19,293 bases of DNA from Trichoplax adhaerens (lineage: Eukaryota > Animalia > Placozoa), in the NCBI RefSeq assembly GCF_000150275.1, contig NW_002060993.1, positions 29,342 through 48,634 on the forward strand, read 5' to 3'. Under the pieces are notes generated by a model. It had not been told where the DNA came from, did not search any database, and worked only from the letters and a program-made list of their open reading frames with translations. The position numbers and the translations under genes were made by a program. Shown piece by piece: positions 1 through 18,600 of the stretch (the stretch's first letter is position 1; every line of letters starts with the position of its first letter).

Positions 1-665
1 TTTGAAAACTTCAAAATACTTGCAATAGAAGGCGTAAGTAACTAGGATATCTACATATCATATCATTCATGCATGAATCACTACCTTTAACAATCTAAGC
101 AATAAAATGGACGATGGAATCATTGGTTATTTACTGTTGCTATTCAAAATCCAACCTTATTTCTTTCCTTTAGATAGTCGATGTAGCCTATAATATACAG
201 TATATATTTCGCTCAAACAAAATATAAGAAATTTATATATAAGTATAAATATAAGAATCTTATATTTGTTTAATAAGTGTAAGAAGCAAATCTGTTAAAG
301 ACTGGATGATTTACGAGGAAAAAAAAACTTCTAGGTAGCATTGTTGCTCATAATTAAGTAAACACAAGCGGTATATCATAGAAATATTGAACACTTACAA
401 GGCGAATACAGTATAGTTACAGTTACTTCATCACATCATATATTTCGCAATAATTTATCCACTGTCATTTTTGCCAATAGCTTCCTTTCACAGATATTGA
501 ATCAATTTTAATTACCTGTAGAAAACATAGTTTTATAGAGAAACTAGTCGTACTTTTTACTGTTGCACCTGCCTAGAAGCATAATAGATAAATTGTTGTT
601 TAAACCAGGTACCTTTCTAATTTTAATACATTTTATATGTATGCTAAAATCGGCTTATGAAGCAG

Positions 666-767
666 ATCAACAATCAGAAGGCTCATCACAAACTATGCCC
701 GAGAAACACAAAAACATTTCAACAGATCAACAGCAAGAAAAAGAGCAAAGGGTAGTACCGGAAGCTG
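666..767 (+). CDS. Internal phase-1/phase-1 exon encoding a Q/E/S-rich low-complexity linker (DQQSEGSSQTMPEKHKNISTDQQQEKEQRVVPEA); probably part of the upstream death-domain gene whose 5' part lies outside the window
   Basis: CAG acceptor ending at 665, G|gtacgc donor after 767, 102 nt (multiple of 3), open frame within ORF 563..820; composition resembles the linker exons of the downstream TPR gene. Confidence 0.5.
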
Positions 768-1305
768 GTACGCATAGAGTGATTGGTTTGATCTCGTTTA
801 TAGTTCATTTGCAGCAGTAATTTATCAAAATTTAGGTTATGCTTTTATGGTAGCATTTCATAAGTTATAAATTCGATCTTAAGTTATAATAACTAAATAG
901 CATTTCTACTATACTCCGTATGAAATCAATCCGTGTATTACTTAACGTAAAAATTGATGTAGTTATCTTACAGTATTGCATTAAGTTTAGTTTTAGTACG
1001 ATAAAGTTTCAACAAGTATCAATTACTGATAGCTTACTAAGCTTACTACAAATGCTAAGAGTCTTCATAATTATGTAATGCAAAAACAGATTAACACCAA
1101 ATACTTTTTAAGCTTGTTTATCTATAAGGATTATATCATTAATATACTGATGTGATACTATACAAGCATCTAACAAGTTAAGACGTGTCATAGCGAAGAC
1201 CGAATGTTCTGCACAGTTTATTGGATGCTATTTGTAATGCAAAATGTCGCTATAGTTATATCGATCATTTTTATAATAACTATGCTATTACTGTTCATTG
1301 GATAG

Positions 1306-1350
1306 AGAAACAAGTCGAGCAGACATCATCTACTGCAACTAGCGATGAAG
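1306..1350 (+). pseudogene. 45-nt linker exon (EKQVEQTSSTATSDE) with an apparently mutated donor site
   Basis: gatag acceptor ending at 1305, open phase-1 frame, ends GAA G|ttaaga where the phase-1 donor gtaaga is expected (the 4450-4512 linker exon uses G|gtaaga). Confidence 0.4.
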
Positions 1351-1697
1351 TTAAGACTGGATAGCATTGATTATACTTAACTTTTGCAGCTTGCTCTTAA
1401 CTATCTTACTAATGCAAATTGTTAGAAGAGTGCATAATCATCAGCTGCTGCTAATAAATTAAATACGCACGCAGTTACCAGTAGAGTTATGAGCGGTTAC
1501 TTTTAAGACATATATCGTCGATTTTTTAATATTGATGATTTAAATATTACGCAAAACAGATAAAAAATTTATCCATAGCATGAAAATAAGTACTAATATC
1601 ACCTCGTATAGCAGCTCCTTGTATCCGTTTTATATAGTTAATTTTCCCTTAATTCTATAGTTTAAACAGCTCTCCTTTCACTTTCTGCACTATACAG

Positions 1698-1944
1698 TAG
1701 ATACATCAACTTTTATAAAAAAAATTTATCGAAGTATTAGTGCAGACTGGAAAAATTGGCAATTGAATTAGATATTGACCGAAACGAAATAAAGAATATT
1801 TCACAAGAATATTCTAGTATGGATATGCGATGTTATGAAATGCTTTATCGTTGCCGCCTGAAATATAGCTGTAAATTTGGATTAAAACTAATCGTTGCGT
1901 TATACGAGATCGATTTGGGCGAAATTGCGGCGAAGATTGCCTGA
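1698..1944 (+). pseudogene. Terminal death-domain exon with a 1-nt frameshift
   Basis: After the tatacag acceptor the frame reads VDTSTFIKKIYRSISADWK; a shift in the A5 run at 1751-1755 continues as LAIELDIDRNEIKNISQEYSSMDMRCYEMLYRCRLKY...ALYEIDLGEIAAKIA*. This matches the death-domain pattern (DWxxLAxxLx..EIxxI......xYxMLxxW...LxxAL); the second conserved Trp is Cys here. Confidence 0.75.
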
Positions 1945-2917
1945 AACTATACCAGTTGACGAAAGAATTTGAGTCTTTGATTTTTAAGTTCTGTTGCCAT
2001 ATATATGATAGGATTAACATTTAATTTTGAAGCTTGTGCTATAAACAGTTCTTATGGAAGTGTACTTAGCCGATTAAAACTATACACGTGAAAGAAATGT
2101 ATATATCTTAGATAGCGTTAATATTTTTTGAAGACTGCGCTAAAAATTGTTCTTATCAAAGTCATTAACTGTTCAAAACTGTACATATGAAAAGTAAAAT
2201 GTATTAGAACCAGCTCATGTGTTCGATAGAAAAAAGAACATAGCAGCTTTAATATACTATACAATAGAGTATGCTGCTACATTTAGTGATTTCAGTTCAG
2301 AATAACAATTTCTATCATCATTTCCACTGAAGGAATCCTCTCTTGCCTAATATTTTTATGGGCAGCATAAGCATACTCGTAACTGTGAATTTAAGCTATA
2401 ATTAAGTTAATAAGATACCGGATTTACAGCTTTGTAAAGTATAGGAATTAGCCGAATCAACAGGTCCATTTCAGGTACAAAATCATTTGATTAATCCAGG
2501 CATTATCTGGATTCTATGAGCTGAAGTCATAATATGGTAATTGTATGCTAATTTTAGTTATTTTATGTACTCTAAGCACAATGCAATCGATCCATTGTAT
2601 TAGATTAGGCAAGGGTTAGAGGAACAACATGTAAAAGATCTCTTGTAATATAGGGGCAATAATAGTTTATATGGAAAGTTTATAGAATAAAGAGGCAGGA
2701 TTGAAACAGTACAACACACCGTGCCTGGAGACCTACCATGAATGTTAGCGAAATTAGAGTTGGCTATAGGTACTAAAAGAGGCTAATTATACTGAAACTA
2801 TTTGGAATATCGTCGATAAAACTAACTTTACTGATAGTACTACTGCAAAGAGATTAATTTATATTGAATATTGTCTGCTTTCAATCAATTATTATACTGT
2901 ATGTCAAGATTGAGATT

Positions 2918-4355
2918 ATGGAGGATGAACCCGCCGTGTCCAAATTCAATCAAGAAATCCATTTCTTCTATTTACAAGGTCAAAAATGTAATAAAGCTAA
3001 CGATTACCAAAAGGCACAAGATTATTTTGTACAAGCCCTGGATAAAATTAATTCACTGTCTAGTGTTACCAATGAAATGGATCTACTAAAATGTGAAATT
3101 TTGAATCAAATCGCTGAAATAAATGTAATACAAAAAGAGTGGGTAAAAGCCAATGAATTCGCTCAAAGGGCTTGTAATGCAGCTGAGAAATTGTCACAAC
3201 CAGCCATAATTGCCAAGTGTTTGGATATGCGAGGCGGTGTTAAATTGCTACTTGGCGATGCAAATAGTGCTCTCGATGACTTTAAGAAGGTACTCGGTAT
3301 TAAATTAAGGTTTTCTGGAGATACTACAGAAACTGCCAAATTATACGAAAGCATTGGAAATATCCTTCGTGATCAAGCTAAATTTAAGGAAGCTCTTTCC
3401 ATGCTGAAAATGAAACTTCAAGTTCAACAGCGAATCCTTGAAGAAAATGATCCTGCTATTGCTGAAACATATAGGAGCATTGGATTCATCTATAAAAGGC
3501 AACGCAAGTATGATGATGCTCTATTGATGTATACAAAGTCGCTCAAAATCAATATTCAGAGAATTGGAGAAGAACATCTCGATGTTGCTGACACCCATTA
3601 CGATATGGGAGAAGTATACAAGAAGCAGAACAAGCTAAGCGAAGCTCTTTCTTCGTATCGTAAAGCTCTTACAATTTATTTAACTTTATTAGATGATAAG
3701 CATCCTAAAGTTGGAATATCGTACAGGAACGTTGCCTGTGTTCTTGATGATCAGTGCAAAATTGATGAGGCTCTTTCTATGTACGAAAAATCGCTTGCAA
3801 TTCAATTGACGTCGGTTGGTGAAGATCATTTAGATACCGCATTACTATATACTAATATTGGACGGATCTACGGTCTTCAAACCAAGTTTGATCAGGCAAT
3901 TTCCTCACATCAGAAATCGCTTAGTATTAAGTTAAAAATACTTGGTGACAGTCATTTAGATATTGTTGATTCTTATAAAGGCATGCGACGTCTATATATC
4001 AATAAGCGCAATTTCATGCAGGTTTTATCCTTATGTAAAAAGTCTCGTACAATTCTAATAAAAGCATATGGAGAATATCATAACAGTGTAGCGGACTGCT
4101 ATGTCGACACAGCAGTAGCGTATCATGGGTTGGGTCAGTATGATAGTGCAATTTCAATGTACGAAAAGGCCAACAGAATTTTTACTCATATTCACGGAGA
4201 AAATCATCCTTACCTTGCCAGTACTTATACAATGATGGCAATTTCATATGAAAACCAACATCGATACAATGATGCTGCTTCTATGCAACAAAAAGCTACC
4301 AGTATTCGTCAAACACTACAAGATGGTAATGCCAATCAATTATTCGCAAATCAAG
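2918..4355 (+). CDS. First coding exon of a TPR-repeat protein (kinesin-light-chain/nephrocystin-3-like 42-aa TPRs, about 11 repeats)
   Basis: Long ORF with ATG at 2918 (MEDEPAVSK); eight 42-aa repeats of the type A.xY.xxG.xY..Q.K...AL..Y.K.L.I....G..H plus about 3 N-terminal TPRs; donor CAAG|gtaatt after 4355. Confidence 0.92.
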
Positions 4356-4449
4356 GTAATTTCTGTTTATTTAAACATAATTTTCAATCATTACATTGAT
4401 AACATTTTCCCTTTATGACACACGATATCTATTTGCACTTTACTAATAG

Positions 4450-4512
4450 GAGAAAAAGTTCAAAAAACAAATCAAGTACAGAACCAGGAGATTCCTAACC
4501 AAGATTTATCCG
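4450..4512 (+). CDS. TPR gene coding exon 2, Q-rich linker (GEKVQKTNQVQNQEIPNQDLS)
   Basis: ctaatag acceptor, G|gtaaga donor, 63 nt, phase 1/1, in frame with exon 1. Confidence 0.75.
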
Positions 4513-4767
4513 GTAAGATCAGAAATTGATAGGCTATTAAAATAATAATTGAAAAAATTTTATATAAAATGTTTGTGCTCCAACAGTTTTCAACTTTTAA
4601 TTTTGCGAGTATGATGCTATTTTATGATAGATTGCTCAAAAATTCAAGAAAGTGCATCTACATATGAATCGTCTTGAGAGATTTCTGTATATTTCAATGT
4701 TATATAACTATTGATCGCCTATAAAATTGGATTATTTCACACATTTGATTCTTATGAATTCATCAAG

Positions 4768-4844
4768 ACCAAGTACTACAACCTGAGAAAGGTCCAAGTT
4801 CTAGTGATAATGATCGTGATGTAAACGAAGAAGAGGTGACAACG
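4768..4844 (+). CDS. TPR gene coding exon 3, acidic linker (DQVLQPEKGPSSSDNDRDVNEEEVTT)
   Basis: catcaag acceptor (AAG, weaker), ACG|gtaaat donor, open phase-1 entry; ends in phase 0, so splicing to 4972 gives CTA TGA (stop 4975-4977). Confidence 0.6.
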
Positions 4845-4971
4845 GTAAATATTGATACGGTATCTAATGGATTAATCGCTATCCATAAAATACACTAATG
4901 TTACGATTTGAATACCTGCAAGTAATCCGCTTTGATTTCATGGATAGATAATATAATTTACTATTTTATAG

Positions 4972-5660
4972 CTATGAGAAAAAGAGCAGTATTTGACACA
5001 TACATGAAAGCATTAGAACAAAGAAGTTGCCGAAATAACCTAATACGTGCTATGTATGCCGGTCCTTGCTACGTCGGTAAATCATCCATTATGAAGTTAT
5101 TTACTCAACAAGACCTTGTAAACCATCAATCTTCAACGCAAACTGTTGATGAGTCTGATATAATGGTCGATCTTGAAGTTTATGGCATTTATGATCGCAG
5201 ATTATATGATCTTAGTCACATTTTGGATGCTAATATTAAGGCGATTATTGCATCGTTAGTTAACACTCAAGAGACAATTCAACACCATCGGTTACAACCT
5301 CAGCAGATTCTCAATCAAAGGCAGGATATCCGTCAGTAAATATTGATAGTTCATGTCTAGCTGATATGAAGCTAGATACTGCCAGTACCTCAGCGTTTGA
5401 ATCATCGGATACTTCTACAACATCTCCTCACAGTTTGTTAGACTTGCAATAACGCCAAGATGTCTTTCTGCATTATTTTTCGTCTGTCCTAAATAAAAAT
5501 GAAGATATTATAGGCAATAGTCAATATGCTAAAATATGGGATTTCGGTAACCATTCTATATATTACGCTACTCAGTACCCGTTTCTATCGGGGAATGGTA
5601 TCTATATTCTAGTATTTAATATTACTCAAAATATTAACGATAAAGTCAAGACAAGAGATA
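4972..5660 (+). pseudogene. Decayed Roc (Ras-of-complex, ROCO family) GTPase exon
   Basis: ttttatag acceptor; Y..AL....R.M.AGPCYVGKSS P-loop (5061-5084) and SST switch I; after a frameshift near 5270-5340 and a TAA at 5450-5452 the frame reads AKIWDFGNHSIYYATQYPFLSGNGIYILVFNIT, the Roc WDFxGQ..YY.TH..FL....IY.LVF motif. No COR domain is visible downstream. Confidence 0.85.
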
Positions 5661-5760
5661 ATGATATATCATTAATCAACGTTGAAAGTACTACTACAAT
5701 TCTGTTAATAAGAAGTTCAGATCTACGCGGAAGCAGACGAACGATTAGATGGTCCTCCTG

Positions 5761-5999
5761 CATCTTCTCGCAGTATTCTAGATTTACAGCAATGTCAAGA
5801 TGTCTTCCAACATTAATTTTCATCTATAGATAATGAAAATAAAGACAGTCAAGGCAATAGCCAATTTGCTAAAATACGGGATTTCGGCTGTCATTCTATC
5901 TATCATGATACTCATCATCCGTTGTTATCGGGAAATAGTATCTATATTCTCGTATTTAATATTACTCAAAATATTAACGATAAGGTCAAGATCACATAA
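5761..5999 (+). pseudogene. Second degenerate copy of the Roc G3/switch-II segment (direct repeat of ~5421-5651, 340-bp offset)
   Basis: Reads DLQQCQDVFQH*FSS...FAKIRDFGCHSIYHDTHHPLLSGNSIYILVFNITQNINDKVKIT*; shares gtatttaatattactcaaaatattaacgataa with copy 1 (5612 vs 5952). Confidence 0.85.
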
Positions 6000-7189
6000 T
6001 ATAGTAAAATCGGGATGTTATTTCATGCACAATATTTTTGTTTTTTTATTTTATCTACAGTGCATTACTGTGCACTCTCAGAGTGCACGGCAAATTTTTG
6101 TATTTTGTTTGTACTGTGCAAGCAAATGTATGAAATTTTTTCGTTTCGGCAATAAATTTCATACCCAACGAAAGAGAATAAGTTGATTTACAAGAATCCG
6201 TGTATTATTTTTCTACAGACTGTATATACCCGTTTCTTCATAGACGGAAGATTTTGATTTAAAATCGATTTTAAATTCGATTAATTGCATATACTATGCT
6301 GGTATGTACGTTTTCATGCGTCTGTATTCATTTATTGTCAAGAAAAAATACTGGAATTAAACTAAATATCGCAACAGGTCTTAAAAATAATCAGTCATTT
6401 TTACATAATTACTATATGCAATATGGACTCAGGCTAGCTTATTCATTACCATAAATAGAAAACTTCTGACTAGCTATTAGCTCAGTAAGATACACAGAAA
6501 TCCGGCATTAATTTTTTACACCGACCATTCTAATTAAGGCAAACAAACATGTTTATGTGGGATATTTTTAGCATCATAATTGTTTCTAAGATATTATCTG
6601 TAGTTGAAAAAAAAGAAAGATTAATCGACATTGCAATAACTTATAACTTTCCATTATTGGTTATAACGTCTTCATGTCAGTTTTAGTGAACTTTGATTGA
6701 TCTTCAGGAATCACATGTGATGTCTCAAATTATTGAATACACTAAAAGAGTTATGTTACCCTACAGTAGTGGTACAAATAACCGAATAAAGCAATACGAT
6801 ATTAAATTTCAACACTGATGAATTGGTTATGTCGTATAAAAATTGCTGTTGATAGTCTTTATTAAGGTTGAATGCTGGAATATCTTAATGATATAAGATA
6901 ACGATGCCATTTATTTATTATCACCTGTCAGACTAGCATAAGATTACAGTTGAAATTATCTTTAATGATTTTACCATACAAATATTAGCGAAATCATTTA
7001 ATACAGCAATCGCAATAGGATTGTTGACATGACAATCAAATACTACTAACTTAGTAACAAATTAGATAAGGTAGTTGGCTAGTGATCATGACTGAAATAA
7101 GCTAAGTGATATTCTACGAACAGATTCTTAACGAAGGTCTATTTAAAATTATGACTAGTTTCTTGCATAACATCAGCCTGGTTAATGCA

Positions 7190-7631
7190 TTAATTGGATT
7201 TTTTTTTCCCAAGAAAGCGAACATTTGTGTCAGTAGTACTGCGACGACGACGACGACGACGGCGACGTCGGCCCCACCACTAAAATAGAAATCATAAAAA
7301 TCTACTTTAGTACATTTCCATTAAGCTTATCTTAAATAGTTTATAGCCGACTATTTGAGTTATTACTATATCATGGACGATTTATCATTATCATTATGCG
7401 TAAACTAACTGCTTTCTTAAGATGTTGCAAATCTTCTTTCAACTCTTCAATCTCTTGGTCTCTTTCATTAAATCGCACTACGTCTCCATCATCTTCTTCC
7501 ATACGGCTAGTAATAGCAAAGTCGTACTGTTCCTTATCATCGTCAGTATTTTGCTTTGCTTGGTCTTCTTTAGCGCTGCAGACTACAACTATTAATAATA
7601 ATGAAGCTAGTACAACTAATTTGGAGTTCAT
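7190..7631 (-). CDS. Secreted prepropeptide, 103 aa; coding exons 7631-7410 and 7279-7190; signal peptide + acidic propiece + KK + AWWG(R)10STTDTNVRFL-GKKKSN; candidate cationic antimicrobial (arminin-like architecture) or neuropeptide-like precursor
   Basis: Signal peptide MNSKLVVLASLLLIVVVCSA; phase-0 intron 7409-7280 with GCA|gttagt donor and ttctattttag acceptor; spliced frame is open to TAA at 7192-7190; AATAAA signals on the - strand near 6910-6919. Confidence 0.85.
7241..7270 (-). repeat. (CGT)n trinucleotide tract encoding ten consecutive Arg
   Basis: - strand CGA CGT CGC (CGT)6 CGC; synonymous CGA/CGC interruptions fit coding poly-Arg; CpG-rich island in AT-rich DNA. Confidence 0.9.
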
Positions 7632-7866
7632 TTTCTCTTTGGTGAATATTATCTAGAAGCGATAGATATAAATGACATTAACGCTTAATGTGAAATTTAT
7701 GCCATTTAAGATCAATTCGCTGAAGCAAACTATTCTAATTTTGAAATTAATCGCTGCTATACATCTTAATTCATTAATTACTGTACTGTAGCTAATTAAT
7801 GATCAAATTCGATTATAATCCAAAAATTTTTCTAAAAAATTACTATCTTATCTTTATAATTCTAAC

Positions 7867-7901
7867 CTTCCTTGCACTTGGTTGCAAAATCGAATCGTGA
7901 A
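7867..7901 (-). other. Predicted non-coding first exon (5' UTR) of the prepropeptide gene; intron 7866-7653
   Basis: GAAG|gttaga donor at 7866, ttctag acceptor ending at 7653 just before the ATG exon, Inr-like TTATTC about 30 nt downstream of the TATA box. Confidence 0.55.
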
Positions 7902-7926
7902 TAACGTAGTGTTGATAGTGGACTAG

Positions 7927-7936
7927 CTTATATAAG
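7927..7936 (-). promoter_or_regulatory. TATA box of the prepropeptide gene
   Basis: CTTATATAAG (palindromic) about 30 nt upstream of the predicted first exon. Confidence 0.6.
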
Positions 7937-8140
7937 AATCGAGGAGGTTTGCAAGACACTATCAATCGGCAATCGTAATTGTATAGCTATTCGTATTTTG
8001 TACGCTTTCTATCAATCGCTGAATTCATTAGCTACTCATTAAACAGATCCATGCAATCATTGATCTTATTGTTAGGCATCTATTTTTGTTGAGAGTATAA
8101 TGTTTGTGTCGATGTTGCGAATAAACACTATTATAATTAT

Positions 8141-8148
8141 TGACGTCA
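8141..8148. promoter_or_regulatory. Perfect palindromic CRE (CREB/ATF site)
   Basis: TGACGTCA about 210 bp upstream of the TATA box. Confidence 0.5.
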
Positions 8149-8530
8149 GCTCAATAGCCTGCGGTGGTTGCATCCTCTTTCTACAGAGCTTATTTCGACA
8201 TTTTCAAGAAATAAATTATTATCAAGAATTTTGAGATGAAAATTCTTAATAACAGAAATAATCGAACCAATTTGGAATACCTTAACAACAGAAACGTAAC
8301 TTCATTATGTATAATATAAATAATATAAGAGAAATTCGAGTTCATCAGGTCTTCTTATCAAGTTTCCTATGGCGCTATTCTGCTGGAAAATATCTTGCTT
8401 TACTATAGTCTGTTTTGTAATTCAATGTATGGTATAATTATAACATGAGTTACTTTTGATCTAAAGTCCGTATTACCTTTGAAATATTTGGAGTAAATTT
8501 TAGTATTTATCAAATCAGGATTTTTTCTTA

Positions 8531-8747
8531 TTATTTAGTTCGCATGTATGCACGTTCTTTTAAGCGATACGAGTTCTAGTAAACATTTGATTATCTTAAC
8601 TACGAAGATCAAGAAATTTAGCAAAGCCCTCATTGTAGTTATTTAGTTCGTATATTTCCACGTTCTTTTAAGTGATACGAGTTTCTAGTAAACATTGGAT
8701 TATCTTAACTACGAAGATCCAAAAATTTAGCAAAGCCCTTATTGTAG
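8531..8747. repeat. Two-copy tandem duplication, 108/109-bp unit (8531-8638, 8639-8747)
   Basis: Both copies run ttatttagttcg...cacgttcttttaag.gatacgag..ctagtaaacatt.gattatcttaactacgaagatc.a.aaatttagcaaagccct.attgtag with scattered substitutions. Confidence 0.95.
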
Positions 8748-11700
8748 CCTCTCATAATACATTTTTTATCCATCATGCCAATAATAGATTGTAAAAACTT
8801 AAGCGGTATTCTAGATGAAATCATATCTATCCCAAGGGATAGATTGCTTGAGGTCAAGTAATTTAAATCATAAATAGGATTCGAGGTGAATACCTGTAAG
8901 TTATTAAAACGTATATTCTGAGTTGTTGTTATCTTGAGAACATTTGCCTACTACAGATGAAACTGTTCCCTTCAGTCCCGTAACTACTTGAAAGAAAGTA
9001 GAATAGTTGACCTTTCTTCTAGCCGATTAATCAATCAATGTGTTGCAATATATACGGAGGAAAATAAACTTCTATACTATTATTTAGCTAGAATTTTATA
9101 CGAAGATATCGATTATGACTGCTATTGTCAATATAAAAGCCGCCTTTCTGTATAGATTTACTAGCTTACCAGTAGCAAACAATATGCACAAATGTCCATT
9201 ATGCTATCACTTATTAATGTCTATAAATAATTCCTTCCTGCAGTGCTTCTTACATCATAAGAGCTACCTTGGAACTAGAAACCTTCTATTTCATTAAGAC
9301 TAATCTTGGGATACCTTATGAATGTCTATTCAAGGATCATAATAAAGATCCATTTCGATCTCGTAATAACTTCTAACTCTTTAATCCGGTATAATTCGCT
9401 AGTTTGATAATGCCTACGATGAACTATTGTTGATCAAGAAGCGAAGCTGCAGATTAATATACGTATTCTTGTCATCAATCTAGAATAGAATATTGTAGAG
9501 TAATTTGCATGGATTTTATCGTAATCTATTGAATTGATGCAACTGATTATTGCAGTATTTATAAATAGCTATTGCTTAGAAAAGCCCATGCAGTAAAAAA
9601 AAGTTAGATTTGTAATCTCTTACATTGTTTATGTAATATCTTGCTTCGTTGCAGACTGTACAATCATTTATGGGATTGATAAGAGTCAATAGTAAGTTTT
9701 GAGTTATTAGCACGAATGGCTATGATTATATTTTACGTACTCTTTGCATATTATATGTATTTCATATTGTACGCCTTCGATCGACGACAATCTATTCAAT
9801 TTTATATAATAGCATGCAATTCTTTTACGTCATTTGCATGCCTGTGGCGTTGTTAATAATTCTGCATTTGTAAATTGTAATTAAATGCAAGAATAAAATG
9901 GTATCATTGATGTAAGTGGTTAATCAGAAATAAAATTCTACACATAATCTATATTTAGTCTAGAATCAGGTAAAGATGAAGCAGAATGAATGGTATGCAT
10001 TAATGATTCAAAGAAATGAGACAAAAAATAATCTAGTATATTTGTAAATAGAGTTATTTGCTAGAATAAGAAAGCTATTAAACTACGCTAATGGAAGCAA
10101 AAAGCAACCAGGAATCTGTTCGATTTTTGTACAGTTTACCAGATTGATACAGAATCCGTTACTGAGCTGATAGAACTCGTAATAAAGTTATCTTGTGCCA
10201 AAAAGTTGGAGCGAAAACGTTTATCCAAGAATAGCTTTAAACCACAATAGTGCAAGCCTAAAGAAATCGGCACATAAATTGAATGATTGACTTGATGAAT
10301 AAGACAGCTTTACTGCGTAAAGATTCCGTGATTATTGTCTAACTAATAGGCTAATTGTGGATACAAATTTAATTCCTAAAAACTGGCCGATCATAAGAAA
10401 TCGATGTTATACCCCCTGTTAAGGATTAGTTAATTAAGAAGAAAGTAAATTCAATAAGTAATCTATTTATATCTCAAGTTCAAATTACATCTGAAGAGGT
10501 CGAATAACGTTAATTGAAATCGTGAAATTGATGATTCAGGAGTAACGTCATATCGATTTCCCGACATTATTCTTTAGTAAGCGTTTCTGCAAATTTTAAT
10601 TTCTAGAAACAGATTAGTTGTATGAGGAGATGATTTTATTATTCAAAATATTCCTCGAAATTGACTATTTAACTTGTAAGAGATGAATCTAGCCACTTAT
10701 GGTATTCTACTGTGTTTCTTAATGCTACTATGACGCTGATTTGTAATCATGAATCGTTGGACTATTCCGCTACCTATAACATTGTTACCTACTCTGCGAA
10801 TATTACAGACTATATTCCAAATACAAAATATTCAACAGTTTTTATTAGTCTAGAAATAATCTAATCTTCACCGTGCAATTTCAGTTTTGCTACCTTAATA
10901 CAGTAATCAAAACGAAAATTACCTAGACACAAATTAGCACTTATCACAAAGGATAATATCGTATAGCAGTCAAAGCGATTGGCAGTATTAAGTTATTAAT
11001 TTAAACATCTGAATGTGGAAAAATATCATCAACTTGCTACAAAAGGCTTTCCTGTAAGGATAGGCTTTTGCTGCAATCAAAAACAAATTTGAACCTATCA
11101 AATCTACCAAACACTATTTGAAGTGCCCAACATTAGATTGCTAACTTATGCTTATTCGAACGAAATCTTAGAATAATAAAAGTATTATGTAACGCCAACT
11201 ACGTCTCTAAAAGTTAGCCAAGTTATCTTTTAGAAATTGCTTTAGCAAAACCAAATTTCCTTCCATATTACATTTACAATGTGAAATATACCAATCAACA
11301 CTATCAAATGCGAATGCATGAATACACCTTGTTTTCATGGAAAAAAGAAATTAACTATCCTACGGATTTAACCATTCGGCTCCTTACTTTCATAATAATT
11401 ATAGAATGGTTCTTAAATTAAGAATATGCAATAATTATAAATTTACGTAAATGATGCTAATTGTGAACATTTGTTACTGTATAAGTGTATATGACTATCC
11501 GATGCCGTAACTTACTGTAAGCAACATGTGGTTCCATGTCAATTAAAGTAAAAAAATGATACTGCTTATTTTACCAAGGCCATGTGTATTTAATAAACCA
11601 ATCATCATAGTTGAAGTTGTTAATTTCTATCTTCTTTCTAACATTGCAATAAAACACGTTCAATATGACTGTCATTATTTAAAGCAGATCATGACGAAAC

Positions 11701-13225
11701 CATAGAGAATAATTACAATGAACTGCCAGTAACTTATTATTTTCAATTTCTTTCTATTATTTTCTTTTTACTTTGATCTTAGCTTATTAGCAGGTTCATT
11801 TATTCCATACAAACCCTTAATACGAAAACGGATATGTCACAAACTAGATTTGAATGTAATAAGAGATCTTGCTCTAGAACACCAGTGACGATAAAGGCTA
11901 GTCTAACAAATGACTAATTACCGTAATTTAACCCTGATGACAACCTGAGTAGCGCACCTTAGCTAGCTTAAGTTATAATAATTAAAGTTTAGTTTATTAT
12001 TACCATACGAATCTTGACAACCAAGTTTATATAGACTCCAGTCAACACACACTAAAGTATGAGATATAGCATAAACAACATTAATGAATCTTAAATCAAT
12101 TATGGATCAATGAAAGACCAATTAATATACGACGCTTAGTACGATACTATTTCGCAACATGGAGCGTCGATAGTATTCTCCATTTTGGAAATTGATAATA
12201 GTGGTAATAAAATATCGTTGTTCCTAATTAACCATCAATTACTACGGACATAAATTATCACAGCTATAAATAACAGTTAAGAGTTGTTTAGTAATATAAG
12301 ACTAATTAATAACTCACAATTTCGTACAATTTTCATCCATAAAGGAGTGAAGATTTACGGAGCCATACATGTACCGTAACAGGATATTTCAATAATCTGA
12401 AATTTTTAGTTTTCTGACCAAGAGATTATGGATACCTCAACTATCAATTTGAATATTAATATAGTCTAAATATTAACATCATCGCAGTGGATTTTTCTAG
12501 TCAGATATTCGATACACTCTTAACAGAGATTCGATTTACGAATTAAACTGTATAACGTTTTCCTTTATCTTCCATATCCAGCACATATGGTAACTTATGG
12601 TTTTATATTACTTTCTTATTCAATTTTTCAACCGGATAATAATTTATGGTATTCATACGTCAACGAGTGATAATAGAAAGCAATTGCTAATTTTTTTAAT
12701 TGTCAAGCTTTGACCATCTGAGCAATAGCCAAAGTACCTTTATCCAAAACACAGTGGTTCATTTCTGCAATCTTAATATCGCAACCAGAAATGAAAATTG
12801 CGACACAAAAATTCGAACCTGTTGCAAACGATAGCTTTATATCACGGCCTAAATGATTAGTAAAATCAAGTTTTCGATGAAATATTTGAATATAGAAGGC
12901 ACAATATATGATCAACTCGCTATGAAACGCTACAACCACAAACAAATTTGATCTTATAGAGCTATCAATCGTTCGTTGTTTAAGTATCAGAGAACAGACA
13001 GTTGGCAATTGATCCTTACTCTAATAAACTTTTAATACTAAAACATTTTATAACAACAACTGCACCTCTAATCATAGACAAAATTGATCTTTTACAAAAC
13101 TAAGTAAGCAAAAAACTGATTTTCTTGCAGTGTAAAATATGGCACAGCAATCAATATTATGCAATGGAAATCCATGAACACATTTCAGTTTTCTTGTATA
13201 AAATAAAATTACTGCACGTATTTAG

Positions 13226-13466
13226 CCATTCGGCTCATTTGTTAATTAAAAGTCATGATATCTCGTCAAATTTGTATAAGCAGTTAATCCTATATGAAAA
13301 TCAATCTAGTTTGAATATTTATAACCCCCAAACACTACAGCTACAAATCACTCTACCATTCCCTCACTTCCAGATAGGGGACATGCAATGGAATCTTCAA
13401 CACTCTCAACTCATCATCAGGAGTGATCAGGATTACTGCTTAGCAAATCCAATGAAAAAGGAATAA
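13226..13466 (+). other. Possible orphan terminal exon with a beta-propeller/WD40-blade-like sequence
   Basis: tatttag acceptor ending at 13225; LNIYNPQTLQLQITLP...IGDMQWN...SQLII resembles a propeller blade; no partner exons identified. Confidence 0.25.
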
Positions 13467-13529
13467 TATTTGCGTGAAATGTAAAGTTAATCTTGTATCT
13501 TGTACCCAGTGCAATTTAACGAGAGTGTC

Positions 13530-14680
13530 AATAAACTAAGTTAATATTGCTTCCATAATCAATGAAGATGATTGATGTGTATGCTGTACAAATGGATAAA
13601 GTATACCCCTAATGTCAGTAAAACCAATACCCAAAAATAAATAAAGCAAAACATGATTAAAAGCAGTGTAGTCTATGTCTAGTCTATGGTCAATGCTATT
13701 GCTGAGTTAGTTTAATGTCTATTACAAATCGTAGTCAAAGAGCGACTTGAAAGAGAAAAGGAAAAACATCTGTACAAAACATTGGTAAAATAGGAGAACA
13801 TAAAGATCAACATTGGGATGGAGAAAATGGATTGCAAAATTGCAGCCTATCTATCATTAAGCATCCCATCTAGTCTAAAGTAGATATTGACGACAGTCTT
13901 GTAATACTGTAGATGGCGATCTCTTCAGCTATTAATAAACTAAATTAACATTACTTCTATCAATCAAGATGCTAGATGTGTATACTGTACTGATGGATAA
14001 AGTATACCCCTAATGTCAGTAAAACCAATACCCAAAAATAAATAAAGCGAGACACCATTGCAATTTAGCAATTATAAAGTATACCCCTAATAATAAATGG
14101 ATAAAGTATACCCCTAATGTCAGTAAAACCAATACCCAAAAATAAATAAAGCGAGACACCATTGCATTCGCCCCATGGACGAATGCAATGGTTGAGTTGG
14201 TTCAATTCCAATTATAAATGGTAGTGAAAGAGAGATTTGAAGAGAAAACGAAAACATTTGTAAAAAGATTCAGGATTAAGATGAAAGTAAAATAGGATGA
14301 GAAAATAAAAACAGGGATAAAGAAAATGATTTGCGAAATTGCGGTGTACCATGGACTATCTCGCCGATCATAAAGCAAACCCCCAAAAGTCAGTTTAACC
14401 AATACCCAAAAATAAATCAAAACAAAATTAATAGTATTGCAATCAATGCAATTGTGCAGCTAGTTCAATGTTTATTGCAAATTGCAGTAAAAGACGGACT
14501 TGAAAGAGAAACGATCTCAGCAAGTTCTTGGTCAAAATAACATGAGAAGATAAAGTAGTCTGCTAGCAAAGGCGATCATGACTGGAAGGGATATTGCAAA
14601 CAGAAAATCGTCTTACCTTGTTGTCCATGTTGTCTTCCACTTTTTCCCGACCCCAAAGGTGAGATTGAGATTTCAATTAG
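13530..14680. repeat. Complex degenerate repeat array with three identical 56-bp cores (13592-13647, 13993-14048, 14097-14152), a partial copy (14074-14091), diverged copies (~14368-14423, ~14650-14675) and three diverged copies of a longer flanking segment
   Basis: Core ATGGATAAAGTATACCCCTAATGTCAGTAAAACCAATACCCAAAAATAAATAAAGC is identical three times; segments near 13690-13845, 14180-14345 and 14445-14555 align (aatgc..t.g.g.agtt.gtt.aa...aaaga...a.ttgaa). Confidence 0.9.
14158..14192. repeat. Perfect 13-bp inverted repeat (hairpin) at a repeat junction
   Basis: ACCATTGCATTCG-ccccatgga-CGAATGCAATGGT. Confidence 0.9.
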
Positions 14681-14991
14681 AGCCAAGAAAAGTTGATGGC
14701 GAGCATGCAGTAAGCAGCGTGGCTGTGCGATACTTTCTCAGTCCAAGTGAGGTTACTCGGTTGATATCTTGCTTATAATATTGTCCGCTGTAGAGTCAAT
14801 TCCTACTCCTATAGGGCGACAAGCTATTTTGCACAGTAACTTGCAGCGCCGACTCTCTACTTAGTCTTCCTCTTCTTCTACTGCCTTCTACACGTGAAAT
14901 GGCAGTCAACCATCAAACGTCTTTTTTTCTCACATTCTTTTTCCATACTACAGATTTCTCTCTCATACTTATTAATCTGTGCTTTTGACAG

Positions 14992-15029
14992 ATATTGTTG
15001 GGTGTTAGCATTCTCATCTTGCTTAGCAG
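14992..15029 (+). other. Orphan 38-nt exon-like segment encoding a hydrophobic stretch (ILLGVSILILLS); acceptor and exon start duplicated at ~15162-15213
   Basis: ttttgacag acceptor, CAG|gtaagt consensus donor; near-copy atttctc..atactt.ttaatctgtg...agatatt..tgggtgtta downstream. Confidence 0.4.
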
Positions 15030-15551
15030 GTAAGTCTTTCAACCAGTTAAAGCAATCTTAATCGATGTCATTTTAAACGCAAACCCTAACATTATTGCCA
15101 TAATATAATCGTCTCTTTATCGCCATTAGACCTATAGTTGACATTTTGGGTTGTGAACTGAATTTCTCTTATACTTGTTAATCTGTGTGTTTTATAGATA
15201 TTACTGGGTGTTATCCCTGGACAATATCCTGGATTATCCCTGCACGGTCATCATTTCTGGTGTTTACTAGCACTAGTGAATCGTTTCACACTTTGTACCA
15301 TGTTGACTTTCATGCTAAAAATTAGTGATGAGTTAATGACTGGTTTGAAAATGGAATTGCTCAAGTACGGCCAAGTTTTGGTTAAAATCATTACGTAATT
15401 TCATTATGTAGTCGCTTCAATTAACGTTACTCAAGATCTTTACTAAATCAATTGCTGTCACTTATACAGTCCGTTTTCCTTATTAGCTATCATTCCAAAT
15501 TTCGCCAACTTGCTAAAGTTCATAATCAATGTAAAGATAAACACGAGTACC

Positions 15552-15601
15552 NNNNNNNNNNNNNNNNNNNNNNNNNNNNNNNNNNNNNNNNNNNNNNNNN
15601 N
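15552..15601. other. Assembly gap (50 N)
   Basis: Run of n. Confidence 1.
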
Positions 15602-18600
15602 TCCATGCCATTGCTATTCACTTTCATTACTCTAGTGCAAGGATTACTTAAATATAGTATAATCAAAGCCGTCTGTATTCTTGAATCAACTATTGATCAA
15701 CTAACATTTTCCTGTTGTCTGATCGTGTGACAAGTACGCGTACTTGTGATGATAGGTGATTAAATTGAATCTTATACTAGAGTCTATCGATGGGGCAGAA
15801 ATAGGACAATCATCCATGATTCCTGTTAGGAATTAATAGCTGCTTGAAGATTATTGGGATAAACATTTTCTATTACAATATCATGGACAAGGTAAGTAAG
15901 TTATGACAGTACTAATATAATTGGAATGGAAGATGAACCGTAGACATTACCACAACCTGTTTTGAGTATTGCTATAACTAAAAGAAGTAAGGCTGCAATA
16001 TTGATTGGCAATTTATCCACACTACATCAATTGAAGATGCAGAATGAACTAATCATCCCCAAAATATCGCTAAGCACTGTTAACTACACGTCGATTGGCT
16101 TACACTAATAGCATCCCAGTGATTGCTCTGTTGATGCAGAATGTAGACGATATAGATCGATATAGATCAAGTGCAGGTGTTGATATCACTACTCTGCGCA
16201 ATTTGATTTCATTCTCTCATTAGTGGCACTTAATTCTTTCAATTTCTTATATTGAGAAAATATAGGATTATGGAAAAGAGGCATTGACAACGACTTCACT
16301 CTATCGTGTGTAATTATCCTCGATGTTTCTTGCATCGTAACTTGCAATCAGCCATCGCTGTCGGTACGGAAGATGAAGAGGCCAACCAGCATCATTATGA
16401 CAGAGGTAAACAGACAGGTAATATAATTTACTAGATGTAATCTACATTGCAGAAATAGGATTATCATCACCATTATCGATCAAGGTGCGTCCTGTATAAT
16501 ATTTTGGATGGCTTTACCCTTAATTACAATGACTTTGATAGATACTATTCAAGGTATTAAAGTAGAATTGATAATGTCAATTTTAACTAAGTACAGATGG
16601 TTAACTTTCCAAGAAGACGGTGAAAAACACAAGGAATTACTAAACTATAACTGACTAAAACAATATACGGGTCGCTAGTTTGTAAGTAGACAAGGTACAG
16701 GAGTAAGAGTGAGAAATTTAATTTGATAACAGCCTTGGATACTCTAAGTGCCTTGCTGACAAAGATTGGTCTATAAGAATATACTCTGTGACTGGAATAA
16801 CAAGTTGTTAAACAAGCTGAATTGCAATCAAACGATTAATTACGAGTCGTATAATTAATGATGATGACCTACTATATATACTGTTCCTGTATTGAAAGCC
16901 TTGAACTGATNCAGATACTTTGTAAACCATATACCATCACTTGTTTTACTTTAGCAGTACCAATAAATGTTATTAAAACTTTGATATGCTCTANCTATTA
17001 AGCTCTAAACTATTGTCAATCTACCCTTCCTGAATTCTAATTTTATTTGCGTGATAATAGCTCAAATTCAACAACCAATTGAAAATAATTGATTGTTATT
17101 TCTTTCTTTGCAAACGGTGCTGTTGCATTATTCATTAATGAACTCAAAGTCAATAATGTGATCGCATGACAGTCGAATAAATTTTCTTTCTACTTTTCTT
17201 CCCTATCTCACTCTTGGCGCTTTTTTGACGGACAAATTCGCTAATTACTTTTTCTTCATCAGCTCCATTAATAAACCGTTAGCTTGAGCATCAAGATTCA
17301 AGAACTGTGAAATACTCATTAAAACGTTGTACCTGGTCTATCCTAATAGATCAAGCAGGAGTGAACTGGTATGGATAGATATTATCATTCAAAATTAACT
17401 TATAAAGTGTTCATCCCAAATTCTCTCTATTTCCTTCCGTGTATTTTATTTTTTATATGCTATGTGTTTGTCACAAGTTTGACGCCTTTAATTCCATTCT
17501 TAACTTAATATTACTCGATAATCCCTGTTCCAGTTTTTAATCTTCGCTTGTGATTTATTTTATGTTAACTTTTTATAAGCCATCAACTGTAGTAAGGTAA
17601 CTAACTTACAGTACTACTATTATTATTTATGTATCGGTTAGTGAAACAAATTATATACTTAAATACATGAAGAATCCGCTAACTTAAATCGATAGTAAGT
17701 ATATGCTTTCTCAAGCCGAAACACTAGTCATGGGCGACTTTTCAGGCCAAATAATCTTACATAAATAAGAGCGATTTGCGAGCCATTTAAAATCCGCAAT
17801 CACTATATTTGTTTCATGCCTAACCCACAATACTAAAAACTAAATGGAGTATGATAGTTTGGTTTTGAGATAGACATTGCAAGAGCATACCGTACAAAAC
17901 TTTATTACAGTAGTAAATTATACTAAAATATGTACTTAGAACTAAAAATGATCGCAGCCACTCTCAATTTCAACCGTTTTCTCCTAGAAGTAACTCTCGT
18001 AATAGACGATAAACTGTCAGCGATTTGAGAAAAAAGTGCTATACGAAGATCTACAGCATAGTCTTGCTGACTATATAACCAAATTTTTTATCATAGTGAT
18101 ATCATAATGATATATTTCTTGTAAATAGTACTAGATACCATCTTATTGCCTCATACGAACTTAGAAAAACGGATACTAAATTAATGCAACCCTTTCAGCA
18201 ATTCAGTAATGAAATCGACGCCTACTGCGGGTATCATTAGCCGGTTGAAGACTAGTCTCTAGTCTCTACAGCATTGCAGTGTGTTTAACCTAGATTTCTG
18301 GGTTTAGTTCAGTGGCTTCTGTTATAAGTCTTTTGTAACAATGATACTCGATAGAGCCTGAGATAGCTGCTGCATCCTATGTTGTATTAGAGTGCCTGCT
18401 TAGCTTATTATGTCATAATTAGGGAAAGATCCTTCAGGCTATTTATAGCTGAAATAGATCATGCAGATGCATATTGCAATAAGGCAATGTGAGCAAACTT
18501 AAATGCGGTAAAGGGCGAAGAAATTATAAAGATTCGTAATAATAAATATACAAAACCTAAGCCATCGAGGTTGATGTTCTTGTTTTAAAGTAACGACGGT

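What the first reader, a model, noticed from the sequence alone, without database searches (positions are those of the whole stretch)
7190..7631. Hidden spliced precursor of a Trp-Trp-Gly-(Arg)10 cationic peptide with an acidic propiece and an amidation signal
Seen in sequence: removing a canonical phase-0 intron (7409-7280) turns the 86-aa ORF into MNSKLVVLASLLLIVVVCSA|KEDQAKQNTDDDKEQYDFAITSRMEEDDGDVVRFNERDQEIEELKEDLQHLKK|AWWGRRRRRRRRRRSTTDTNVRFL-GKKK-SN*. The propiece has 19 D/E against 7 K/R (about -12), while AWWG...RFL has 11 R and 1 D (about +10), so the two nearly cancel. Established: signal + anionic propiece + cationic C-terminal peptide with a Gly-basic amidation site is the layout of many antimicrobial peptide precursors (e.g. 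Hydra arminins), and Trp+Arg-rich and oligo-Arg peptides are membrane-active or cell-penetrating. Inference: this is a natural W2R10 antimicrobial, lytic or cell-penetrating effector. From memory, arminin-like prepropeptides have been reported in placozoans, so novelty must be checked.
Basis: partly seen in the sequence, partly recalled or inferred. Interest (0 to 1): 0.85.

Follow-up and report, generated by a model that had tools for sequence, protein, structure and literature searches.

The report
Trichoplax arginine-rich secreted peptide gene
This is a real two-exon gene of the placozoan Trichoplax adhaerens for a secreted peptide with two tryptophans and ten arginines, but it is already an annotated protein and belongs to a published family of putative antimicrobial peptides, so it is a new member of a known kind.

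Summary
On the minus strand, exon 1 (7631-7410), a 130-nt GT..AG phase-0 intron (7409-7280) and exon 2 (7279-7190) give a 103-aa prepropeptide: signal peptide, acidic propiece, KK, then A-WWG-R10, a neutral 10-residue tail, and Gly-KKK.

It is not hidden. The database holds exactly this protein (XP_002118415.1, "expressed protein", T. adhaerens). An identical model exists in Trichoplax sp. H2.

The genome has five more Trp-Trp-polyArg genes with the same layout, inside a superfamily of about 36 exon-1-like loci. Two paralogs are published:
- the trichoplaxin-2 precursor, which has an EST; synthetic tail peptides had MICs of 0.25-2 uM;
- "AMP3" (TRIADDRAFT_60631), an arminin-like gene highly expressed in peripheral ventral epithelial cells.

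Codon comparison of paralogs shows that the Arg frame is the selected one.

For this gene, three things remain untested: the mature peptide form, the amidation and any activity. Its tail is neutral, unlike trichoplaxin-2. A rival reading is that the poly-Arg run is a convertase site that releases short amidated peptides.

This scan had already found the family on other DNA of this genome (s1-767924, s1-772808).

The parts
7572..7631 (-). Start codon and signal peptide (aa 1-20, MNSKL + hydrophobic core, ending C-S-A)
   Evidence: The MNxKL-hydrophobic N-terminus aligns in all five paralogs. The signal peptide of the paralogous trichoplaxin-2 precursor is reported as 'strongly predicted' (PMC7436000). 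No signal-peptide predictor was available here.
7410..7571 (-). Acidic propiece (aa 21-74; 19 D/E), ending L-K-K-A. The KK at 7413-7418 is the likely convertase site.
   Evidence: The end of the propiece (EEL.EDLQ.LKK[A/S]) is conserved in P0008 and P0010, which come from other unnamed assemblies.
7280..7409 (-). Phase-0 intron, 130 nt, GTTAGT...TTTTAG
   Evidence: The same intron position and phase occur in all paralogs and in the wider superfamily. The homologous junction in the C1378 paralog is confirmed by a published EST-derived precursor.
7271..7279 (-). Trp-Trp-Gly at the start of exon 2
   Evidence: WW is invariant in the five aligned paralogs. The Gly is unique to this gene and its near-identical copies.
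7241..7270 (-). Ten Arg codons (CGA CGT CGC, then CGT x6, then CGC)
   Evidence: The paralogs carry runs of R8 to R13 with mixed AGA/CGA/CGC/CGT codons.
7211..7240 (-). Neutral polar tail STTDTNVRFL
   Evidence: net charge 0. The C1331 copy has N instead of the first S.
7190..7210 (-). Gly (amidation donor), Lys-Lys-Lys, Ser-Asn, and the TAA stop (7190-7192)
   Evidence: A Gly followed by K or R closes the peptide in all five aligned WW-polyArg paralogs; in four of them the stop codon follows directly.
6910..6919 (-). Candidate polyadenylation signal (overlapping AATAAA motifs), about 270 nt after the stop
   Evidence: Read directly. This is inference only; no transcript data.

Best explanation
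The locus is an intact two-exon gene of Trichoplax adhaerens, already annotated as XP_002118415.1 / B3SDU6, 'expressed protein'. It encodes a 103-aa secreted prepropeptide of the placozoan-specific arginine-rich peptide family. That family also contains the trichoplaxin-2 precursor and the 'arminin-like' AMP3 (TRIADDRAFT_60631). Likely mechanism: the signal peptide takes the precursor into the secretory pathway. The acidic propiece (net about -10) offsets the +10 C-terminal part during storage in granules. A convertase cuts at KK just before Ala74. The C-terminal KKK-SN is trimmed and the exposed Gly is converted to a C-terminal amide. The released Trp-Trp-oligoArg peptide then acts outside the cell on anionic microbial or prey membranes, with the Arg guanidinium groups binding and the Trp residues anchoring at the interface. 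Shown here: the gene structure, the selected reading frame, family membership, and the absence of any relative outside placozoan-like sequences. Taken from the literature, for paralogs only: a cDNA, expression in epithelial cells, and antibacterial activity of a synthetic tail peptide. Inferred: every processing step and the activity of this particular peptide.
For: The sequence and splice sites are as described. The exact spliced protein is in the database for T. adhaerens and, identically, for Trichoplax sp. H2, with a 104-aa second H2 copy. Five further WW-polyArg genes share the MNxKL signal, the acidic propiece, the phase-0 intron and an exon 2 starting WW (FWW in the sixth, L034) plus R7-13; the five aligned ones also have the Gly-basic end. 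BLASTP of P0001 against AMP3 (P0006) gives E 2e-8, and the alignment runs across the junction into AWW(G)RRR. Frame test: between the tandem C1399 genes, exon 2 shows 11 synonymous against 4 non-synonymous codon differences in the Arg frame, and 0 against 14 in each other frame. Arg is also kept with mixed codon families. PMC7436000 derives trichoplaxin-2 from EST GR418172.1; its residues 71-86 are A+WW+R13, followed by HH. That is exactly my C1378 model, so the homologous junction and frame are confirmed by cDNA. The same paper reports MICs of 0.25-2 uM for the synthetic peptides T2 and T2R1. [quoted passage not shown]
Against: Only the database label 'expressed protein' hints at EST support. 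No paper held in the library names this gene. Its tail after the Arg run is neutral and weakly amphipathic, so the activity measured for the trichoplaxin-2 tail cannot be transferred to it. A run of ten Arg is itself a stack of potential convertase sites, so the intact W2R10 peptide may not survive processing. Two near-identical partial copies in the assembly lack exon 2 (C1276) or exon 1 (C1331), so the locus is structurally unstable. The charge balance between propiece and peptide is only approximate across the paralogs: -10/+18, -17/+12, -20/+12.
Confidence: 0.62

Rival explanations
1. The precursor yields short amidated regulatory peptides, and the Arg run is a giant convertase and carboxypeptidase substrate, not the effector. 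Cutting at KK and within or after R10, followed by trimming and amidation, would give AWW-amide (Gly-Arg follows WW only in this gene) and STTDTNVRFL-amide. The paralogs would similarly release 8-13-residue C-terminal amides after an internal RR/RRR site (for example SWWNQRVPV-amide and STVHCRCY-amide).
For: Basic residues followed by a peptide, then Gly and more basic residues, is the canonical neuropeptide precursor grammar. In all five aligned paralogs the peptide ends at a Gly followed by K or R, and three of them have a second RR/RRR site inside the tail. The WWG-R arrangement of this gene fits an amidation site. This gene's tail is neutral, which is odd for an antimicrobial peptide.
Against: The invariant WW plus 8-13 Arg, kept by purifying selection with mixed codons, is far more than a cleavage site needs. 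Superfamily members have the entire exon 2 built from RRR-aromatic repeats with a single terminal Gly, which does not look like a multi-copy neuropeptide precursor. AMP3 is among the most abundant transcripts of ordinary ventral epithelial cells, not of peptidergic gland cells (PMC12013895). From memory, unchecked: oligo-arginines inhibit furin-type convertases rather than being good substrates.
Confidence: 0.2
2. It is a feeding effector rather than an immune one. The cationic Trp/Arg peptide is secreted onto algae and biofilm under the animal to permeabilise prey cells for external digestion.
For: The paralogs AMP1-3 are expressed in the ventral (feeding) epithelium (PMC12013895). Trp/Arg-rich peptides are generally membrane-active (established knowledge).
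Against: The same paper places the AMP-expressing cells at the periphery, with little overlap with digestive-enzyme cells. Prey lysis in Trichoplax is attributed to lipophil cells. The expression site of this particular gene is unknown.
Confidence: 0.1
3. It is a recent, functionally drifting or decaying duplicate. The gene is transcribed, but its product has lost the active amphipathic tail and has little function.
For: The tail is neutral. Partial copies lack one exon each. The (CGT)n run is a slippage-prone microsatellite. The C1276 exon-1 copy carries 3 non-synonymous changes against 1 synonymous, two of them E-to-K.
Against: Both exons are intact, with canonical splice sites and an intact Gly-basic end. 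The protein is identical in Trichoplax sp. H2, and a second H2 copy is also intact. The exon-1 end is conserved in more distant unnamed assemblies (33% identity overall).
Confidence: 0.06
4. The splice is an annotation artefact, and the real product is the 86-aa read-through ORF or a model in another frame.
For: Two automatic models of paralogs read exon 2 in another frame (P0007, P0004), and P0002 reads through the intron.
Against: Frame-specific synonymous substitution, the conserved intron position across more than 12 loci, and the published EST of the C1378 paralog.
Confidence: 0.02

Closest known systems
Trichoplaxin-2 precursor (T. adhaerens EST GR418172.1; Juretic et al. 2020, Molecules 25:3526, PMC7436000)
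   Same: It is a paralog in the same genome (C1378). It shares the MNxKL signal, the acidic propiece ending KKA, the phase-0 intron, an exon 2 starting WW plus poly-Arg, and the Gly-Lys end.
   Different: It has R13 instead of G+R10. Its tail is a +5 amphipathic 18-20-mer that was synthesised and shown to be antibacterial, whereas the window gene's tail is a neutral polar decapeptide. Exon 1 is only about 25-30% identical.
Trichoplax 'arminin-like' AMP3 = Ta 60631 / TRIADDRAFT_60631 (Mayorova et al. 2025, PLoS One, PMC12013895)
   Same: It is a paralog (BLASTP E 2e-8 across the junction) of the same length (103 aa) and the same architecture...AVKAA | WW-R9-tail-G-R.
   Different: The tail differs (IFLT-RR-SWWNQRVPGYY). 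The propiece is more acidic (-17). Its expression is published (peripheral ventral epithelial cells), while the window gene's expression site is unknown.
Hydra arminins (Augustin et al. 2009, as cited in PMC12013895)
   Same: The design is the same: signal peptide, anionic propiece, cationic C-terminal peptide with a C-terminal Gly for amidation, a taxon-restricted multigene family, and epithelial expression.
   Different: There is no detectable sequence homology. A profile search of 1.84 billion representative proteins found only Trichoplax or unnamed placozoan-like sequences. Arminins have no Trp-Trp-oligoArg block. The resemblance is in layout, not in shared ancestry.
Synthetic Trp/Arg-rich antimicrobial peptides and oligo-arginine cell-penetrating peptides (R8-R12)
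   Same: The composition is similar: two Trp followed by ten consecutive Arg is close to designed CPP/AMP sequences (established knowledge; the carrier idea for the Trichoplax poly-Arg segment is raised in PMC7436000).
   Different: Those peptides are designed, whereas this one is gene-encoded with a propiece. Neither uptake nor killing has been tested for this sequence.

Membership tests
Placozoan WW-polyArg secreted peptide family (trichoplaxin-2 precursor / AMP3) | N-terminal signal peptide of the MNxKL + hydrophobic type | tested here: met
   In the alignment of five paralogs, M1, N2, K4, L5, A9, L11 and L12 are invariant. The call is by composition and homology only; no SignalP was run.
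Placozoan WW-polyArg secreted peptide family (trichoplaxin-2 precursor / AMP3) | Strongly acidic propiece filling the rest of exon 1 | tested here: met
   19 D/E in 54 residues, net -10. The paralogs range from -10 to -20.
Placozoan WW-polyArg secreted peptide family (trichoplaxin-2 precursor / AMP3) | A single phase-0 intron immediately before the Trp that opens exon 2 | tested here: met
   GCA|GTTAGT ... TTTTAG|TGGTGG. The position and phase are the same in the paralogs and the superfamily.
Placozoan WW-polyArg secreted peptide family (trichoplaxin-2 precursor / AMP3) | Exon 2 begins WW followed by 8 or more Arg, read in the Arg frame | tested here: met
   WWG+R10. The frame is supported by 11 synonymous against 4 non-synonymous differences in the paralog pair, with 0 against 14 in the other frames.
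Placozoan WW-polyArg secreted peptide family (trichoplaxin-2 precursor / AMP3) | C-terminal Gly followed by basic residue(s) | tested here: met
   ...RFL-G-KKK-SN-stop. All five aligned paralogs have this end.
Placozoan WW-polyArg secreted peptide family (trichoplaxin-2 precursor / AMP3) | Significant sequence similarity to a published member | tested here: met
   P0001 against TRIADDRAFT_60631: E 2e-8. The exon-1 profile retrieves all members at E 1e-21 to 1e-30.
Placozoan WW-polyArg secreted peptide family (trichoplaxin-2 precursor / AMP3) | Transcribed and spliced as modelled | not testable with these tools
There is only the database name 'expressed protein' and the EST of a paralog.
Antimicrobial peptide (functional class) | The mature peptide kills or inhibits microbes | not tested
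   Only the tail of the C1378 paralog has been assayed (PMC7436000). The window gene's tail is different and neutral.
Hydra arminin family | Sequence homology to arminin precursors | tested here: not met
   An HMMER profile of exon 1 against 1.84 billion representatives gave 9 hits, all Trichoplax or unnamed ENA/Logan contigs. Pfam gave nothing above cut-off. Only the exon-1 profile was tested; no arminin sequence was available for a direct comparison.
Hydra arminin family | Signal / anionic propiece / cationic C-terminal peptide / C-terminal Gly layout | tested here: met
   The layout is as described for arminins in PMC12013895.
Amidated regulatory (neuro)peptide precursors | Peptide flanked by basic cleavage sites with a C-terminal Gly | tested here: met
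   KK...R10-decapeptide-G-KKK. This is formal grammar only.
Amidated regulatory (neuro)peptide precursors | Expression in peptidergic secretory cells together with PAM and convertases | not testable with these tools
   No expression data for this gene. The paralog AMP3 is expressed in ordinary ventral epithelial cells.

The most novel reading that the evidence does not exclude
The conserved Trp-Trp-oligoArg block is not simply an antimicrobial warhead. It may be a natural, gene-encoded cell-penetrating or granule-packaging module. In this member it would be coupled to release of two small amidated peptides, AWW-amide and a neutral ...VRFL-amide decapeptide, that act as signals. One placozoan gene family would then bridge host-defence peptides and regulatory-peptide precursors.
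Probability: 0.15. Interest if true: 0.6.

Novelty: new member of a known kind. Interest (0 to 1): 0.3.

Why it matters
Placozoans have no organs or nervous system, and they defend and feed with secreted products of a few epithelial cell types. A large, lineage-specific family of extreme Arg/Trp peptides with acidic propieces is part of that toolkit, and it is a source of natural oligo-arginine sequences. This gene adds one uncharacterised, structurally divergent member: WW-Gly, R10 and a neutral tail. The work here also shows that several public gene models of the family are mis-framed or truncated (TRIADDRAFT_64292, TRIADDRAFT_63910, TRIADDRAFT_62579, TrispH2_012006). That matters for anyone counting or mining these peptides. 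It does not open a new kind of biology, because the family, its layout and the AMP hypothesis are already published.

Tried and rejected
I could not fetch the ENA/Logan contigs behind P0008-P0011, so I could not see their exon 2 or their source organism.
The joined protein was used only as the database entry P0001.
- Pfam: nothing above any curated cut-off.
- ESM Atlas: holds the sequence, but gives no usable neighbour.
- Paper searches for the accession numbers of this gene and for TRIADDRAFT ids found nothing beyond PMC12013895. The supplement of that paper held as text has no sequences.
- Whether the window gene is the published AMP4 (Ta 64402, XM_002118041.1): probably not, because the accession numbers are about 370 apart, but this is unresolved. 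AMP1 and AMP2 (Ta 55945, Ta 56030) were not recovered by my length-limited searches, so I did not show their membership of the superfamily.
- The C1411:8142759 WW-polyArg site first looked like a chance hit, with no AG directly before TGGTGG. I revised this to a sixth, divergent member once an exon-1-like ORF was found about 170 nt upstream and an AG|TTC TGG TGG acceptor was seen.
- I rejected the idea that C1276 is an independent intact paralog. It is collinear with the window but lacks 6499-7375.
- I did not run structure or complex prediction. A short, mostly disordered propeptide would not give a decisive result.

Full report
**What is in the sequence**

On the minus strand an ATG at 7631 opens an 86-aa ORF (7371-7631). 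It starts with MNSKL and a hydrophobic core ending C-S-A. A 54-residue stretch with 19 Asp/Glu follows, ending L-K-K-A. Directly after the Ala codon (7412-7410) comes GTTAGT. Then, 130 nt further on, TTTCTATTTTAG ends at 7280. The next 30 codons (7279-7190) read WWG, ten Arg, STTDTNVRFL, Gly, KKK, SN, stop.

The only difference is bookkeeping: the propiece is -10 if the KK site is counted and -12 if it is not.

**Where it comes from, and whether it is hidden**

The window is contig C1364 (48.6 kb) of a 105.6-Mb, 1414-contig genome. I searched exon 1 by reference and got back a 103-aa database protein, P0001. It is letter for letter exon 1 plus exon 2. Its accessions are XP_002118415.1 / EDV19102.1 / UniProt B3SDU6, "expressed protein [Trichoplax adhaerens]".

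The identical sequence is RDD35943.1 (TrispH2_011753) of Trichoplax sp. H2. A 104-aa near-identical second H2 copy is TrispH2_011751. So the gene model is public and was reached twice by independent annotations. It is not hidden.

I never joined the exons myself. All searches used single exons by reference or database ids.

**A family, not a singleton**

The DNA pattern TGGTGG plus at least 7 Arg codons gives 10 matches in the genome (several overlap at one locus; 7 places), against 0 and 1 for the reversed control on the two strands. Besides the window and a near-identical copy of its exon 2, the sites are C1378, two tandem sites on C1399, C1410:626513 and C1411:8142759.

Each has, 130-260 nt upstream on the same strand, an ORF that begins MNxKL plus a hydrophobic core and continues with a very acidic stretch. 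Each has a GT donor in phase 0, and an AG directly before the Trp.

The five aligned exon-2 peptides share an invariant WW and R8-R13. In all five a Gly followed by K or R closes the peptide, and in four of them the stop codon follows directly. The sixth member (L034, FWW-R7...) has no such Gly end.

A profile of the five exon-1 peptides finds 36 exon-1-like places in the genome. Those I opened are again two-exon genes. Their exon 2 starts W-S/R-RRRR, consists of RRR-aromatic repeats, and usually ends G-K-K. They include a tandem array at C1411:6.59-6.63 Mb and an (RRRLYY)n gene at C1411:4745066.

**Is the Arg frame the real one?**

Two automatic models (TRIADDRAFT_64292 = P0007 and TrispH2_012006 = P0004) read exon 2 of the paralogs in another frame (GGEDAVVD...), and TRIADDRAFT_63910 (P0013) does the same in the superfamily.

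The DNA decides the question:
- In the Arg frame the paralogs keep Arg while mixing AGA, CGA, CGC and CGT codons. The +1 frame gives Val runs in some genes and E/D/A/V mixtures in others.
- Between the two tandem C1399 genes, exon 2 has 11 synonymous and 4 non-synonymous codon differences in the Arg frame. It has 0 synonymous and 14 non-synonymous differences in each of the other frames.

**Independent cDNA evidence for a paralog**

Juretic et al. 2020 (PMC7436000) took "trichoplaxin-2" from the precursor encoded by T. adhaerens EST GR418172.1. [quoted passage not shown]

My C1378 model has a 71-aa exon 1 ending KKA, then WW, R13, then HH. Residues 71-86 are therefore A+WW+R13, and the published 20-residue T2 peptide (HHW...VIGK) is the end of its exon 2. 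That confirms the homologous junction, phase and frame at the cDNA level.

**What is published about the family**

- The same paper reports MICs of 0.25-2 uM for synthetic T2 and T2R1. It also suggests that the natural poly-Arg segment could serve as a peptide carrier.
- Mayorova et al. 2025 (PMC12013895) describe "arminin-like" putative AMPs of Trichoplax. Their AMP3 is Ta 60631, and P0006 = TRIADDRAFT_60631 is the second C1399 gene (103 aa...AVKAA|WW-R9-...GYYGR).
[quoted passage not shown] By FISH for AMP1 and AMP2, these metacells map to peripheral ventral epithelial cells.
- They also report that Hoilungia H13 and Cladtertia H23 have a gene more than 55% identical to AMP3.
- BLASTP of the window protein against AMP3 gives E 2e-8, with the alignment running through the junction into AWW(G)RRR.

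No paper held in the library names the window gene itself.

**Relatives elsewhere**

I ran HMMER with the exon-1 profile over 1.84 billion representative proteins. It found nine proteins. Five are the Trichoplax models. The other four (P0008-P0011) are unnamed read-through ORFs from ENA and Logan contigs.

P0008 is 33% identical to the window protein (E 1e-14). It keeps the end of the propiece (EELEEDLQQLKKS) followed by a Val codon, that is, a GT at the same place.

No cnidarian protein was hit, and Pfam has no family for it. The likeness to Hydra arminins is therefore one of design, not demonstrable homology.

**How this member differs**

- It is the only member with Gly after WW.
- Its post-Arg tail is neutral (one Asp, one Arg), polar and weakly amphipathic. 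The trichoplaxin-2 tail is +5 with a high helical hydrophobic moment.
- All of its cationic character therefore lies in R10.

**Mechanism**

The best-supported reading is a secreted host-defence-type prepropeptide. It enters the ER, is stored with the acidic propiece offsetting the Arg block, and is cleaved at KK. The C-terminal KKK-SN is trimmed, the Gly is amidated, and the Trp/Arg peptide acts extracellularly on anionic membranes. Only the gene structure and family membership are shown here. Expression and activity are known for paralogs only. All processing steps are inference.

The main rival is that R10 is itself cut and trimmed, releasing AWW-amide and a ...VRFL-amide decapeptide as small signalling peptides. 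The formal grammar fits this rival. However, the strictly conserved WW plus 8-13 Arg, the all-Arg-repeat exon 2 of superfamily members, and the epithelial expression of AMP3 all argue against a mere cleavage site.

**Structural instability of the locus**

- Contig C1276 (11 kb) is collinear with the window at 97.5-99.4% identity but lacks window 6499-7375, which is exon 2 and most of the intron. Its model TRIADDRAFT_62579 (P0002) therefore reads into the intron.
- Contig C1331 matches window 481-7354 at 96-99% identity, which covers exon 2 (with Ser to Asn after R10). It continues upstream into unrelated sequence, and no exon 1 is found on it.
- Three copies of window 4056-6498 exceed two haplotypes. 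There is therefore a real duplication (H2 also has two genes) or an assembly artefact.

**Verdict**

The gene is real, but it is an annotated, uncharacterised member of a published placozoan Arg-rich peptide family. This scan had already met the family on other DNA of the same genome (notes s1-767924 and s1-772808). The first of those notes gave me the trichoplaxin-2 lead, which I checked against the paper and the genome myself. Novelty: new member of a known kind. Interest is modest.

Noticed in passing
G000:C1276:1-10000 (L023) against window 4056-15129: An 11-kb contig is collinear with the window (97.5-99.4% identity) but has an 877-bp deletion of window 6499-7375. The deletion removes exon 2 and most of the intron. 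The annotated TRIADDRAFT_62579 (P0002) is the resulting read-through of exon 1. Its exon 1 has 3 non-synonymous changes (two of them E-to-K) against 1 synonymous.
   Followed up: partly
G000:C1331:25268-36000 (L008, L024, L025) against window 481-7354: A third copy of the region carries exon 2 (Ser to Asn after R10) but breaks in the intron at about window 7354. Upstream it continues into unrelated DNA with no exon 1. Three copies of window 4056-6498 imply a duplication or a mis-assembly.
   Followed up: partly
L018:2559-3067 (G000:C1399:1380558-1381066): The public model TRIADDRAFT_64292 (P0007) uses a different intron and reads exon 2 out of frame (GGEDAVVDAVD...). The conserved reading is WW-R13-IFLTRRSWWNQRVPV-GK, a tandem twin of AMP3. 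TrispH2_012006 (P0004) and TRIADDRAFT_63910 (P0013) are mis-framed in the same way.
   Followed up: yes
G000:C1411:6594373-6628970 (L035, L037, L038, L040, L041, L043): A tandem array of at least seven two-exon genes. Each has an MKFTLVLLASLLFLAVAVRA-type signal, an acidic exon 1 and an exon 2 of RRR-aromatic repeats ending G-K-K. One of them (L041) has an in-frame TAG.
   Followed up: partly
G000:C1411:4745066-4745281 (L039, minus strand): A family member whose exon 2 is about eight tandem copies of RRRLYY, followed by RRRYI/RRRRYYY variants, and ends RRRRF-GKK.
   Followed up: no
G000:C1399:1383392-1383514 and G000:C1378:46344-46421: Exon-1-like fragments with an in-frame stop (TGA and TAG) lie next to intact family genes. 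They are probably pseudogene copies. An earlier scan note calls the C1378 one a stop-carrying copy of AMP4.
   Followed up: no
window 2864-4399 (+): A 511-aa open frame of tetratricopeptide-like repeats lies upstream of the peptide gene. I did not examine it.
   Followed up: no
window 15552-15601: A run of 50 N (assembly gap), plus single N at 16911 and 16994.
   Followed up: no
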